Positions 6,001 to 9,000 of a stretch of DNA of 33,348 bases are shown one piece after another. Numbering within the stretch: the stretch's first letter is position 1; each line of letters opens with the position of its first letter. The position numbers and the translations under genes were made by a program. The stretch is from Guillardia theta CCMP2712 (Eukaryota > Protista > Cryptophyta). Location: positions 1 through 33,348 of the forward strand of contig NW_005434515.1 of assembly GCF_000315625.1 (NCBI RefSeq), read 5' to 3'. The notes under the pieces were generated by a model. The model saw only the letters and a program-made list of their open reading frames with translations. It made no database searches and was not told the DNA's origin.

Positions 6001-9000
6001 GGTACTCGTTGAACTTACTTCTTCCTACCAGGTCGCAGCTGCCGCCAACGGTCCAAGTGAGACAGAAGAAGAAGAGAGGAGCGACGATCTCTGAGACTGA
6101 CGGGAGGGCCTGCTGGGACTCCTCCTCGTTCTGAGACTTGAAGTGCTCGACCTCGTGCTCGAAGATGTGCATGATGGAGGAGAGGAGGCGGAACAAGCTC
6201 TGAGCAAGGTTGTTGTCCACTGTTGCTACAGTCTCGACCAGGTTCTTCCTCACGAAGGTGATACAGTTCTCCAAGTACTGCTGAAGCAAGTCAAGCAGGA
6301 CCGTCTCAGTAGAGGCAAAGGAATGCGGGAGGGAGGCGAGCCAAGACTGCGCGAGAGGCATCAAACCGAGCGCACTTGGCTCCATGTATATCATGCCGCA
6401 TCGACTGACAGTGGCAGGAGAAGCAACAGCAAGGTCTTCAACTTCAAACATCATCGTCATGGTTGGCGTAAGAGCGATGATCTCCCCGCTGACAAGACAC
6501 AACTTCTTGTTGTCGTCGAGAACCGTGTTCATGTTCTCGATCCAGATTGCGTCCACAGGTCCGTCAAACATGATCCATTTCTTGTCAGGTGACGTGTCTT
6601 GCGCGCACTCTCGGATGATCCCAGCAAGGATCCCATCAGTCCACTCGTGGGTGTTGACGTCAAAGTCGCCGTAGAGCTGACCTGACGTGATGGACTTGGG
6701 GTTGAGGGTGTGGTACTTGACATGCTCGAACAGAGCTGGGCTGTCGATCAGAAGTTTCTCCTCCCACTCCTCCAGGGACAGAAAGCCATCCTTGTCCTTG
6801 TCGATGTAGTTGAAGACTGAGCGAGCGTTTGACCCGTCAAAGGGCCGCTGCTGGTGCTCGTGCATGAAGGCGTTGAGATGGTCTCTAAACGTCGCCTTCG
6901 CTACCAAACCCTTGTCATTGGGCTGAAGAGCTGAGAAGCTGTCAGCTGGGCTCTTGCCCGCGGCCTTAACGGCAGCTCGGAGGTCGAAGAGATCCTTGGA
7001 CAAGGTCATAGCAGCGGCGAGGGTCCGGTAGTTCATCGTCTTGCCTCCTCCGGTGGGCCCGACGAGCATAAGGCCGTGCCGCACAACGGTAGTGTCGTAG
7101 AGCTGGATCATCTTGGCGACGAAGGAGGGGACGGGCTGGAGGGATCTGGTCTCGGAGCTGGACTTCATGGTCTCGATCAGCTCGCCGTAGTCGATCACGG
7201 GCCTCTCGACGCCGAGGAAGAGATCATTCATGATGCCGTCAAACAGCGTCAGATCTTCGGTGAGGAACTTGGGCTTGTTGACGTCTGTCAGGGCGCGGAA
7301 GAGGAGGGTATCCTCGCTGGTGTTGGGCTGATCTCGTTTCAATATGCCTGCGGCGTTGATCACGGTCTTAACCGCCCTCATCCCGAAGTCGTAGTGGTCC
7401 TGGGAGGACAGCTGCTCCGATGACAACTTGAACGTCGCCACGATCTTGCGGGAGAGAGGCTTTGCGTTGCTGAAACCGAAGGAGAAGAGGCTGATCTCAG
7501 CGATCAGCCCGTAGTCAGGGACCATCATGGCCATGGGGCGGAAGAGCGCCTTCAGGTTGTCCGGCAGCTCGCTCCTTCCCGCGTATCCCGGGTTCATGGT
7601 GATGAAGACGGCGCAAGTGACGTCGAGAGCGATGTCGCAGCCCTCGAAGATGAAGTTGGTTTGCTTCCTCTGCGTGGCCAGCTGGATGGTGATCACCTGC
7701 TGGGCGATGACGGATAGAACTTCGATGTCGATGCGGTTGAACTCGTCGAAGCAGGCCCATGCTCCTGATGACGCCAGCCCCTTGAAGAACTTTCCCATTG
7801 CCAGGTAGTCCAGACCATCGCTGCAGTTGAACACAACCGTCTGCTTTGCTAGCGCCTTCCCTAGATCTTTCGTCGTCTCCGTCTTACCCGTCCCAGCAGG
7901 TCCCGCAGGAGCTCCTCCCAGGCACAGGTGCATGGCGCTAGTCAAGGTGATGTAGCATCGGTCAGTCAGGGGCGTGATGACGAGTCGGGGGGTGTTGCCG
8001 AGGTACTCATACCCGTAGATGAACACTGCCTGCACCTGTTTCACCGTCATATCCTCTCCTCTCCCCGCGTTGTAGAAGAGAGGCAACTTGGCCTTGGCTC
8101 TGCAGTAGTCCTCTCCATCCCAGTAGTACCTCAGCTGGCTGATCCACTCGAAGTCCTGCACGTCAGACACTCCCACCTCCTCCAGTCGCTGGATGACATC
8201 CCTGGCGTGCACCTCGATCGTGATTAGCGCCCCCAGCGTCAGCGACCCGAGCTTGTCCAGCTTCCCCCGCACGAGTGACACCAGGCCTTCCAGCTGCACC
8301 AGCATCTTCTCGTAGTACTTCTTGAGGCCCAGCGCTCCCTCAGTGCTGATCGCCTCCTCCACCTCGATGCTCCAGTAGTACTGGCTCCCCGCCAGCACCA
8401 GCTGCCCGGGCCAGTCCAACACCCACTGTGTCCTCGGCTTCTGCGCATAGTCGTCGGAAGCAGCTCGGAGGCGATGGCGGAGGGTGACCCGCATCATGCT
8501 CTCGACGTCCGTCAGCCAGCTCTCGACGTTCCCTCGGATCAGCAGCGTCTCGGGGAACGGAATCATCTCACCCTCAGCCGAGTACATGGCGGTAGCGGAG
8601 ACGTTCTTGCCGTCGATGACGAACTCGAGCTTGTTAATCGCCTCGAAGCATTTCTTGAGGTGAGGCTGGACGGCGGTCACTTCCTTGGTCTGCGACAGGA
8701 TCTCCAGCAGCTCGTCGTTGGACAGGAAGTAGAACCTGGCGAAGCCAGCTCTCTTCGTCTCGAGGTAGTCCGAGAGCCCCTTCTGCACCGAGTCAAGTAC
8801 CTTGTTCCCGTCCCGGAACAGATCGAGAATCTTGTGGCTGCTGCAGACCTCGAGGACAGCTGGGTTCTTCTTGGCACCGTCGTTGATCCTCCTCCAGTTG
8901 CGATCGACCAGCTGAAACTTCTTGCTCTCCCCCGGCAGCTGTATCAGGGCATCAGCAGGGGAACGAGCAGGGGTCAGTAGGATAGGGGAGGGGGGGCGAG

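What the first reader, a model, noticed from the sequence alone, without database searches (positions are those of the whole stretch)
6731..7003. EF-hand module inserted into the AAA2 domain of an inner-arm dynein heavy chain
Seen: after the AAA2 Walker A helix ([19 protein letters not shown]) come 91 residues before [15 protein letters not shown]. They hold a canonical EF loop, [12 protein letters not shown], with correct flanking hydrophobics, plus a degenerate partner hand. The segment has no microsatellite or stop, unlike the longer introns here. Established: this loop is short in typical dynein heavy chains (roughly a dozen residues, from recall), and Ca2+ control of axonemal dyneins normally acts through separate subunits such as centrin, calmodulin, LC4, DC3 and calaxin. 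Inference: a dynein motor with a built-in Ca2+ sensor on the AAA ring, giving direct calcium control of flagellar beat. I know of no described example, but cannot check the literature.
Basis: partly seen in the sequence, partly recalled or inferred. Interest (0 to 1): 0.85.

Follow-up and report, generated by a model that had tools for sequence, protein, structure and literature searches.

The report
EF-hand domain inside dynein motor ring
An inner-arm flagellar dynein motor gene carries a real, conserved calcium-binding (EF-hand) domain spliced into its second ATPase module, so this motor may sense calcium itself instead of through a separate subunit, although calcium binding and expression remain untested.

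Summary
On the minus strand, window 6731-7003 encodes 91 in-frame residues between helix H1 and strand S2 of AAA2. The gene is a dynein heavy chain of the DNAH1 / Chlamydomonas DHC2 (inner arm d) class.

- **Size of the insert:** the Walker A to NPK spacing is 112 residues here. It is 27-33 in 90 of 115 representative dyneins.
- **EF-hand identity:** the segment passes Pfam EF-hand cut-offs and contains one canonical loop, [12 protein letters not shown], plus a degenerate partner loop. It folds in silico as an EF-hand pair sitting on an extended H1 helix.
- **Not an intron:**
  - Its codon-position composition matches the exons.
  - It has no splice consensus at its ends and no microsatellite, unlike every true intron of this gene.
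  - Two diverged environmental orthologues keep the same in-frame insert.
  - Those orthologues retain all Ca2+-ligand positions, although the insert is only 24-31% identical to the window.
  - Between the two orthologues, pN is 0.24 and pS is 0.75 in the insert.
- **Single origin:** the three insert bearers group together on a tree built without the insert columns.
- **Prior description:** no solved dynein has the insert, and I found no paper describing it.

Verdict: a new variant of a known kind. A direct Ca2+-sensor role is plausible but is only inferred.

The parts
194..12667 (-). Axonemal inner-arm dynein heavy chain gene, DNAH1 / Chlamydomonas DHC2 (IDA d) class. It runs off the window start, so the C-terminal part is missing.
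   Evidence: tblastn exon map with P0009 and P0013. Pfam order DHC_N2, AAA_6, AAA-lid, AAA_7, AAA_8. Best solved matches are 8glv_Lc DHC2 at 1408 bits, then DNAH1 at about 1300 bits.
7037..7060 (-). AAA2 Walker A (P-loop), GPTGGGKT. Helix H1 starts here.
   Evidence: Read directly from the sequence. The AF2 model places one continuous helix from here into the insert.
6731..7003 (-). 91-residue EF-hand-pair insert between H1 and S2 of the AAA2 large subdomain.
   Evidence: Pfam EF-hand hits. Absent from all solved dyneins. Shared in frame by P0001/L001 and P0002/P0151/L002/L005/L006. AF2 models. Fold matches are to EF-hand domains.
6890..6925 (-). Degenerate first EF loop, [12 protein letters not shown]. 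Gly at position 6 and Val at position 8 are kept. Position 5 is Lys and position 12 is Thr, so no Ca2+ binding is expected.
   Evidence: Register set by the predicted beta bridge (insert residues 33-35 paired with 74-76) and by the EF-hand_7 pair alignment covering residues 22-79.
6767..6802 (-). Canonical EF loop, [12 protein letters not shown]. Ligand positions 1, 3, 5 and 12 are D, D, D and E, with Gly6, Leu8 and Ser9.
   Evidence: Pfam EF-hand_5, _6 and _1. PS00018-type pattern. Positions 1, 5, 6, 9 and 12 are invariant in the three homologues, position 3 is D or N, and position 8 is I or L.
8942..9118 (-). True intron that happens to be in frame and stop-free (GT..AG, CT-rich). It serves as an internal contrast to the insert.
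   Evidence: Gap in the tblastn map. Sequence and flat codon-position GC of 0.69/0.66/0.71.
3892..4186 (-). True intron with a GA/CT microsatellite (GT..AG).

Best explanation
Window 6731-7003 (minus strand) is translated sequence. It encodes an EF-hand pair inserted into the surface loop between helix H1, which starts at the P-loop, and strand S2 of the AAA2 large subdomain. The host gene is a single-headed inner-arm dynein heavy chain of the DNAH1/DHC2 (IDA d) class. The insert was gained once in the common ancestor of this organism and at least two environmental relatives, and purifying selection has kept it since.

The predicted architecture is as follows. H1 is extended by three to four turns. 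At its tip sits a five-helix module with a non-binding first loop and one canonical Ca2+ loop, [12 protein letters not shown].

The most likely function, which is inferred, is that the single site binds Ca2+ and that the resulting change in the EF pair does one of two things. It may be passed through the rigid H1 extension to the AAA2 nucleotide pocket and the AAA1/AAA2 interface. Or it may make or break a contact with a neighbouring axonemal structure. Either way this dynein's activity would depend on Ca2+ without a separate sensor subunit.

My probabilities: real translated EF-hand domain about 0.9; binds Ca2+ about 0.65; regulates motor output or docking in a Ca2+-dependent way about 0.35.
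For: **Family and class:** Pfam domain order and PDB matches place the gene in the DHC2/DNAH1 class. L001 falls in the same class.

**EF-hand identity:** EF-hand_5 passes its Pfam cut-off of 25.9 bits independently in all three inserts, at 28.5, 30.2 and 27.0 bits. The PS00018-type pattern has a chance of 3e-4 to 8e-4 per 91 residues. phmmer of the insert finds only EF-hand proteins: NCS-1 at E 1.7e-4, rice Rboh EF region at 7.5e-4, CCDC81B at 9e-4.

**Coding rather than intron:**
- Codon-position GC is 0.60/0.36/0.73 in the insert. Flanking exons give 0.53-0.58/0.39/0.82-0.86, and the in-frame intron gives 0.69/0.66/0.71.
- No donor in or beside the insert fits the gene's own AG|GT[AG]NG pattern.
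- There is no tandem repeat in the insert, while the gene's introns carry microsatellites.
- The insert is kept in frame on four independent metagenome contigs. These contigs do have introns elsewhere.

**Selection:** the insert is 24-31% identical to the window while the flanks are much better conserved (flank pN 0.15-0.17 against insert pN about 0.5), yet all Ca2+-ligand positions are kept. For L001 against L002, insert pN is 0.24 and pS is 0.75.

**Single origin:** the three bearers form one group with SH-aLRT 94 and one change on a tree built without the insert columns.

**Fold:**
- The AF2 model of AAA2 plus insert has pLDDT 87.9. It shows H1 continuing into the insert, then two helix-loop-helix units with a beta bridge.
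- The insert-only model has pLDDT 70.7.
- VIA-align gives Z 11.4, rmsd 2.2 A over 87 residues to the EF domain of CCDC81B, and Z 10.3 to ACF7 EF1-EF2.
- All 50 best Foldseek rows are EF-hand proteins.

**Context:** IDA d carries p28 and actin, not centrin (PMC10266980). The known AAA2 inserts are H2 and PS-I, not this site (PMC4047620).
Against: - Runs X1-X4 turned out to be DNA. The RNA contig runs hold almost none of this gene.
- **Weak selection signal for the window itself.** Window-against-relative comparisons are saturated (pS 0.57-0.81, pN about 0.5). Purifying selection on the window's own copy is therefore shown only by the preserved frame and motif.
- **Few bearers.** Only three are known, two of them environmental contigs of unknown taxon.
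- **Moderate model confidence.** Insert pLDDT is 64-86, and Foldseek E-values are weak at 0.03-0.1.
- **One functional loop.** Single-site EF pairs can be structural or low-affinity.
- **AAA2 is not a hydrolytic site.** It is regarded as a structural ATP site (PMC4047620), so a regulatory route through it is speculative.
- **Position not measured.** The position of the module relative to the ring and to its neighbours was not measured, because no coordinates were available.
- **EF-hand fusions may be common here.** Unchecked first-reader notes suggest many in this genome. Some of them could be neutral domain shuffling.
Confidence: 0.6

Rival explanations
1. The insert is a real, translated EF-hand-fold domain, but it is not a regulator. 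It would be a structural spacer or docking knob on the AAA2 rim, with Ca2+ permanently bound or not bound at all. It would have no Ca2+-dependent effect on motility.
For: Only one of the two loops is canonical. The insert evolves much faster than the motor core, at 24-31% identity against well conserved flanks (flank pN 0.15-0.17 against insert pN about 0.5). An extra N-terminal helix packs on the pair as in parvalbumin-like closed modules, which were the top Foldseek rows. AAA2 is a non-hydrolysing structural site (PMC4047620). Many EF-hand fusions are noted in this genome (unchecked).
Against: Every Ca2+-ligand position (1, 3, 5, 9, 12) plus Gly6 and the hydrophobic position 8 is retained in three lineages, while about 70% of the other residues changed. 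That is the pattern expected if Ca2+ binding itself is selected.
Confidence: 0.28
2. The segment is a stop-free, in-frame intron or other non-coding sequence that is removed from the mRNA. The EF-hand resemblance would then be accidental or a relic.
For: This gene does contain an in-frame, stop-free intron at 8942-9118. Several database dyneins show intron-like read-through at this same H1-S2 site (P0020, P0070, P0091). There are no RNA data.
Against: The codon-position composition is exon-like. No GT-AG pair with the gene's own consensus flanks the segment. It has no microsatellite, unlike all identified introns. Two orthologues conserve it in frame with a low pN/pS ratio and an intact EF loop. 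It passes Pfam cut-offs in all three and has a confident EF-hand fold.
Confidence: 0.04
3. The segment is an optional cassette. It would be coding, but included only in some transcripts or life stages, giving isoforms of dynein d with and without the EF hand.
For: Nothing direct. The insert length is a multiple of three, and removing it would restore a loop close to the normal length.
Against: There are no usable splice sites at its borders. In none of the three lineages is it a separate exon; it is continuous with both flanks.
Confidence: 0.05

Closest known systems
Chlamydomonas DHC2 (inner arm dynein d) and mammalian DNAH1
   Same: They are the best sequence matches over AAA1-AAA4 (1408 and about 1300 bits). 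They share the domain order, the intact P-loops in AAA1-AAA4, and the conserved AAA2 H2 motif [13 protein letters not shown] and PS-I motif DDNKKLCL. The flanks of the insert are about 75% identical to DHC2.
   Different: DHC2 and DNAH1 have about 9-12 residues between H1 and S2 of AAA2. Here there are about 83 more residues, forming an EF-hand pair. IDA d is known to carry p28 (DNALI1), actin, and p38/p44 or ZMYND12/TTC29, with no Ca2+-binding subunit (PMC10266980).
Separate Ca2+-sensor subunits of axonemal dyneins: LC4, DC3, calaxin, and centrin on IDA b, e and g
   Same: They are EF-hand proteins that couple Ca2+ to dynein heavy chains (PMC4415241, PMC10266980). Calaxin appears among the weak sequence matches of the insert (E 0.043).
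   Different: Those are independent polypeptides with three or four hands that bind heavy-chain tails or stalk regions. Here a single pair, with one working loop, is part of the heavy chain itself and sits on the AAA ring.
Canonical AAA2 inserts of dynein (H2 and PS-I beta-hairpins)
   Same: They are insertions into the AAA2 large subdomain that project from the core fold.
   Different: H2 and PS-I are universal, lie on the linker face and push the linker (PMC4047620). The EF insert is restricted to one clade. It lies in the H1-S2 loop at the other end of helix H1, and it is a helical Ca2+-binding fold.
EF-hand domains embedded in large cytoskeletal or ciliary proteins (CCDC81B of Tetrahymena doublets, ACF7/MACF1 EF1-EF2)
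   Same: They are the best structural matches to the insert model: Z 11.4, rmsd 2.2 A over 87 residues, and Z 10.3, rmsd 1.9 A over 81 residues. In both, an EF pair is used as a module inside a much larger protein.
   Different: The host proteins are unrelated, and there the EF domains sit between or after other domains. Here the pair interrupts a single AAA+ fold.

Membership tests
EF-hand (Pfam clan CL0220, PROSITE PS00018) | A 12-residue loop with oxygen ligands at positions 1, 3, 5 and 12 (Glu or Asp at 12), Gly at 6 and a hydrophobic residue at 8. | tested here: met
   The loop [12 protein letters not shown] matches the PS00018-type pattern. EF-hand_5 scores 28.5 against 25.9 and EF-hand_6 scores 26.2 against 25. 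The same positions are kept in P0001 and P0002.
EF-hand (Pfam clan CL0220, PROSITE PS00018) | A helix-loop-helix, paired with a second hand through a short antiparallel beta bridge. | tested here: met
   This holds in predicted models only. The helices are at 19-24, 36-50, 57-67 and 77-85, and the strands 33-35 and 74-76 pair. Fold matches are to solved EF-hand pairs. The EF-hand_7 pair HMM scores 27.4 bits, just under its cut-off of 30.
EF-hand (Pfam clan CL0220, PROSITE PS00018) | Binds Ca2+. | not testable with these tools
   This needs ITC, a 45Ca overlay or spectroscopy on the recombinant insert.
Dynein heavy chain, single-headed inner-arm class DNAH1/DHC2 (IDA d) | A motor domain with linker (DHC_N2) and AAA1-AAA4 P-loops in the dynein order. 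| tested here: met
   Pfam gives DHC_N2, AAA_6, Dynein_AAA_lid, AAA_7, AAA_lid_1 and AAA_8. The P-loops [24 protein letters not shown] and GVGGSGRQS are read in the ORF.
Dynein heavy chain, single-headed inner-arm class DNAH1/DHC2 (IDA d) | Closest to DHC2/DNAH1 rather than to other inner-arm or outer-arm classes. | tested here: met
   DHC2 scores 1408 bits and DNAH1 1294-1306 bits. The next class scores 1139 bits or less, and outer-arm chains score 722 or less. No named-sequence phylogeny was made.
Dynein heavy chain, single-headed inner-arm class DNAH1/DHC2 (IDA d) | A tail that docks with p28/actin and p38/p44 next to radial spoke 3. | not tested
   The tail region (about 10232-12667) matches only weakly. 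Partner genes were not searched.
Spliceosomal intron of this gene | GT..AG borders with the gene's own AG|GT[AG]NG and YAG|G consensus. | tested here: not met
   All eight introns read have it. No such donor exists at or near 7003, and no in-frame pair brackets the insert.
Spliceosomal intron of this gene | Low-complexity or microsatellite content and no codon periodicity. | tested here: not met
   There are no tandem repeats in 6000-7700. Codon-position GC is exon-like.
Dynein Ca2+-sensor light chains (LC4, calaxin, centrin, DC3) | A separate polypeptide with three or four EF hands that binds the heavy chain. | tested here: not met
   The EF pair is continuous with both flanks in one ORF, in the window and in four contigs of relatives. 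It may work like these sensors, but it is not a member of the group.

The most novel reading that the evidence does not exclude
A dynein heavy chain that is its own Ca2+ sensor. Ca2+ binding to the single canonical loop would move the EF pair at the tip of the extended H1 helix of AAA2. Because H1 starts at the AAA2 P-loop, this would shift the AAA1/AAA2 interface that drives linker bending. Ca2+ would then gate the power stroke of inner-arm dynein d directly, and so change flagellar waveform, with no light chain involved.
Probability: 0.25. Interest if true: 0.85.

Novelty: new variant of a known kind. Interest (0 to 1): 0.62.

Why it matters
Ca2+ switches ciliary and flagellar waveform in almost all eukaryotes. 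Every dynein-associated sensor described so far is a separate subunit: LC4, DC3, calaxin, centrin or calmodulin complexes. How the signal reaches the AAA ring is still unclear.

A natural heavy chain with an EF-hand pair joined to the helix that leaves the AAA2 P-loop would be a compact, genetically defined system. It would allow a direct test of whether a Ca2+ signal applied at the ring can control a dynein.

It would also show that the H1-S2 loop of AAA2 tolerates a folded domain. That is useful for engineering sensors or tags into dynein motors.

If the module proves to be only structural, the finding is still a clean case of a domain inserted into an AAA+ fold and kept across lineages.

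Tried and rejected
**Read laying.** I sent window 4000-9990 with runs X5, X1, X2 and X3. All later queries used coordinates up to 7720 or from 7760 on, and my local scripts treated the two sides as separate pieces.

**Were X1-X4 transcriptomes?** Their complete coverage of 6400-7400 would then have proved that the insert is in mRNA. I rejected this. They hold 0.43-0.85 of the words of the intron-rich stretch 9900-11250, where spliced RNA could hold at most about 0.44 (my estimate from the intron lengths read). They are therefore DNA.

**The search for homologous proteins.** Three searches restricted to the insert, with query lengths 1209, 201 and 420 aa, were all blank. This probably reflects the word index and the E-value scale, not absence.

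**Metagenome contig scan.** The scan with the insert alignment returned only two unrelated EF-hand proteins, L003 and L004. Neither has dynein flanks.

**Other blank searches.** The protein-atlas search gave only a generic dynein AAA cluster. An exact look-up of a neighbouring ORF, meant to identify the source record, found nothing.

**Organism.** I first took the organism for Emiliania huxleyi, then dropped that as unsupported. The window's GC is 55%. The sequenced strain is also reported to hold only three fragmented dynein genes (PMC5100056). Same-genome notes point to a plastid-bearing alga (unchecked).

**P0127/P0152.** This is a dynein with a 105-residue linker at the same site. I rejected it as a homologue of the insert because the linker is basic, low-complexity and has no EF-hand hit.
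Full report
**1. What is in the sequence**

The finding lies on the minus strand, inside a 1916-codon open frame at 4091..9841. After the AAA2 P-loop GPTGGGKT (7037-7060) and helix H1 ([11 protein letters not shown]), 91 residues are encoded by 7003 down to 6731. The conserved strand [15 protein letters not shown] follows.

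On the 91 residues alone, Pfam gives these scores:

| Model | Bits | Cut-off |
|---|---|---|
| EF-hand_5 | 28.5 | 25.9 |
| EF-hand_6 | 26.2 | 25 |
| EF-hand_1 | 24.1 | 25.4 |
| EF-hand_7 (pair) | 27.4 | 30 |

The EF-hand_7 hit covers insert residues 22-79.

The loop [12 protein letters not shown] (6767-6802) fits the PROSITE-type EF pattern. That is the only match in the ORF pieces searched. Random 91-residue strings with the insert's composition match in 8e-4 of trials, and strings with the ORF's composition match in 3e-4.

**2. Which gene it is**

The Pfam domain order is DHC_N2, AAA_6, AAA lid, AAA_7, AAA lid, AAA_8.

Against all solved structures, the best match is Chlamydomonas DHC2 (8glv chain Lc) at 1408 bits. 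Three mammalian DNAH1 chains follow at about 1300 bits. Other inner-arm classes score 1139 bits or less, and outer-arm chains score 722 or less.

DHC2 and DNAH1 are the heavy chain of inner arm dynein d. That dynein carries actin and p28/DNALI1, and it docks with p38/p44 (ZMYND12/TTC29 in humans) next to radial spoke 3. Unlike dyneins b, e and g, it has no centrin (PMC10266980).

A tblastn map with two full-length dyneins gives exons at about these coordinates:
- 12667-11192
- 10648-10232
- 9916-9119
- 8941-7004
- 6730-4187
- 3891-1567
- 1478-1149
- 719-519
- 304-194

The gene runs off the start of the window.

**3. Is the loop unusually long?**

Yes. Among 115 dyneins from the representative search that carry both motifs, the Walker A to NPK spacing is 27-33 residues in 90. 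It is 112 residues here.

Every solved dynein aligns in two pieces that break at the insert. Chlamydomonas DHC2 has about 9 residues where this protein has 91.

The first four residues of the insert (LSKD) and the last four (SPAL) align with the ordinary short loop. The net gain is therefore about 83 residues.

**4. Intron or coding?**

The gene's true introns are easy to recognise. They are 50-300 bases long and have AG|GT[AG]NG donors and YAG|G acceptors. They are filled with CT- or GA-rich microsatellites. One of them, 8942-9118, is in frame and stop-free, so the intron rival had to be taken seriously.

The insert differs from these introns in every respect I could test.
- **Composition.** GC at codon positions 1/2/3 is 0.60/0.36/0.73. 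The flanking exons give 0.53-0.58/0.39/0.82-0.86. The in-frame intron gives 0.69/0.66/0.71.
- **Splice signals.** No donor near 7003 fits the gene's own consensus, and no in-frame GT-AG pair brackets the segment.
- **Repeats.** Tandem Repeats Finder reports nothing between 6000 and 7700.

**5. Relatives with the same insert**

I ran an exhaustive HMMER search of 1.84 billion representative proteins with the insert plus flanks. Two representatives aligned end to end through the insert: P0001 (56% identity) and P0002 (54%). The other dyneins matched only the two flanks; the single further end-to-end hit, P0127 (36% identity), carries an unrelated low-complexity linker.

Both come from JGI metagenome contigs. 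These are L001, and L002/L005/L006, from four samples. The contigs are eukaryotic genomic DNA with short, repeat-rich GT-AG introns of their own elsewhere in the gene. In all of them the insert is continuous with both flanks.

L001 is also of the DHC2 class, scoring 1095 bits to DHC2 and about 915 to DNAH1.

Within the insert, identity to the window is only 31% and 24%, while the flanks are much better conserved (flank pN 0.15-0.17 against insert pN about 0.5). Even so, the Ca2+ loop reads as follows:

| Sequence | Loop |
|---|---|
| Window | [12 protein letters not shown] |
| P0001 | DDDKDGFISKEE |
| P0002 | DLNADGEISRDE |

Positions 1, 5, 6, 9 and 12 are invariant. Position 3 is D or N, and position 8 is I or L. 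The hydrophobic core residues of both hands are also invariant (F23, L33, A37, F39, F64, Y66).

Each insert passes the EF-hand_5 cut-off on its own, at 28.5, 30.2 and 27.0 bits.

Between L001 and L002, the insert has pN 0.24 against pS 0.75, and the flanks have 0.05 against 0.83. This indicates purifying selection that is weaker than on the motor core. Comparisons that involve the window itself are saturated and show little.

A maximum-likelihood tree of the AAA2 region was built with the insert columns dropped. It places the three bearers on one side of a branch, with SH-aLRT 94 and a single change. This fits one gain. The nearest rows without the insert are P0060 (unnamed ENA genome assembly), P0009 (an oomycete dynein), P0110 (an unnamed JGI dynein heavy chain) and P0011 (from the animal Intoshia linei).

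**6. Predicted structure**

AlphaFold2 was run on AAA2 plus the insert, using a 55-row alignment. Mean pLDDT was 87.9 and pTM 0.83. In the model, helix H1 runs on unbroken from the P-loop for about 14 residues into the insert.

Two helix-loop-helix units follow. Their loops pair through a short beta bridge, between model residues 80-82 and 121-123. That bridge is the signature of an EF-hand pair. pLDDT within the insert is 64-86.

The bridge fixes the register of the first loop as [12 protein letters not shown]. Gly6 and Val8 are kept, but position 5 is Lys and position 12 is Thr.

The insert modelled alone has pLDDT 70.7. Foldseek matches it only to EF-hand proteins in the top 50 rows, with weak E-values of 0.03-0.1. 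The wide VIA-align search is stronger:

| Target | Z | rmsd | Aligned residues |
|---|---|---|---|
| EF domain of the ciliary protein CCDC81B | 11.4 | 2.2 A | 87 |
| ACF7 EF1-EF2 | 10.3 | 1.9 A | 81 |

These are followed by many other EF-hand domains.

By sequence, the insert's best solved matches are NCS-1, the rice Rboh EF region and CCDC81B, at E 2e-4 to 9e-4.

**7. Where it sits (inference)**

In dynein AAA+ large subdomains, H0 and H1 flank one side of the sheet, and the strands of AAA1-5 point roughly toward the ring centre. The known AAA2 inserts, H2 and PS-I, project onto the linker face (PMC4047620).

H1 runs antiparallel to strand S1, away from the P-loop. Its C-terminal end, and hence the insert, should therefore lie toward the outer rim of AAA2, away from the linker-contacting hairpins.

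I could not measure this, because the tools return no coordinates.

**8. How it most likely works**

Shown:
- The segment is a conserved, in-frame EF-hand pair with one canonical site.
- It is joined rigidly to the helix that leaves the AAA2 P-loop. The rigid join is seen in the model only.

Inferred:
- The site binds Ca2+ (my estimate about 0.65).
- Binding changes either the AAA2 pocket and AAA1/AAA2 interface, or a contact with a neighbouring axonemal structure, making dynein d responsive to Ca2+ (about 0.35).

The main rival is a purely structural or docking module (about 0.28). The intron rival is now unlikely (about 0.04).

**9. What could not be done**

Runs X1-X4 hold the insert region completely, but they proved to be DNA runs. 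They also hold 0.43-0.85 of an intron-rich stretch where spliced RNA could hold at most about 0.44, by my estimate from the intron lengths.

The RNA contig runs of the same species label hold 0.00-0.02 of either stretch. The gene is therefore not detectably expressed in those samples. This fits a gene used only by a flagellate stage, but it gives no evidence either way.

The organism's name is coded by the tools, and I could not establish it.

**10. Novelty**

No solved dynein has the insert. Among the 150 best of 3645 hits in 1.84 billion representative proteins, only the two environmental sequences share it.

Four full-text searches found no description of an EF hand inside a dynein heavy chain. 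I also read in the review of dynein Ca2+ sensors (PMC4415241) and the large dynein survey (PMC5100056), with the same result. That library is incomplete, so this is absence of evidence only.

I class the finding as a new variant of a known kind: a known motor and a known sensor fold in a new covalent arrangement.

First-reader notes on the same genome list many other EF-hand fusions, including one inside a kinase activation loop (unchecked). EF-hand shuffling may therefore be common in this lineage. That lowers the surprise somewhat, but it does not explain why the ligands are conserved.

Noticed in passing
window 8942-9118 (minus strand): A true GT..AG intron that is in frame and stop-free. 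It reads through as a Pro/Ser/Leu-rich stretch inside the 1916-codon ORF. Any ORF-based gene model would wrongly include it.
   Followed up: partly
P0127 / P0152 (JGI and ENA contigs, up to 14.8 kb): A different, more divergent dynein (36% identity, degenerate AAA2 P-loop GSAMSGKT). It has a 105-residue basic, low-complexity linker at the same H1-S2 site, with no EF-hand hit. Several other database dyneins (P0020, P0070, P0091) show intron-like read-through at this site. The site seems prone to introns and insertions.
   Followed up: partly
window 17532-18842 (+) and 25302-29018 (+): The neighbouring ORFs encode a sulfotransferase-domain protein (Sulfotransfer_1, E 1e-29) and a 1238-residue protein with a C2 domain (E 2e-14). 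Other long ORFs (14421-16112 minus strand, 23663-25393 plus strand) have no Pfam match.
   Followed up: no
window 6400-7400 and 9900-11250: RNA contig runs with the same species label (X6-X18, 2014-2020) hold 0.00-0.02 of the words of this gene. The dynein appears not to be expressed in the cultures usually sequenced, which could mean a non-flagellate stage.
   Followed up: partly
window 9900-11250: Two freshwater metagenome runs (X20, X21) hold 0.20 and 0.10 of the words of this stretch. This may reflect the microsatellites in its introns rather than the organism's habitat. It was not resolved.
   Followed up: no
They lie in the conserved AAA1 region of the dynein. I sent nothing from them to any search tool afterwards.
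   Followed up: no
same genome, other pieces (first-reader notes): 49 notes on this genome mention EF hands fused to or inserted in other proteins: a kinase activation loop, single-domain voltage-gated channels, plastid terminal oxidase. This suggests widespread EF-hand domain shuffling in a plastid-bearing alga. The notes are unchecked.
   Followed up: no
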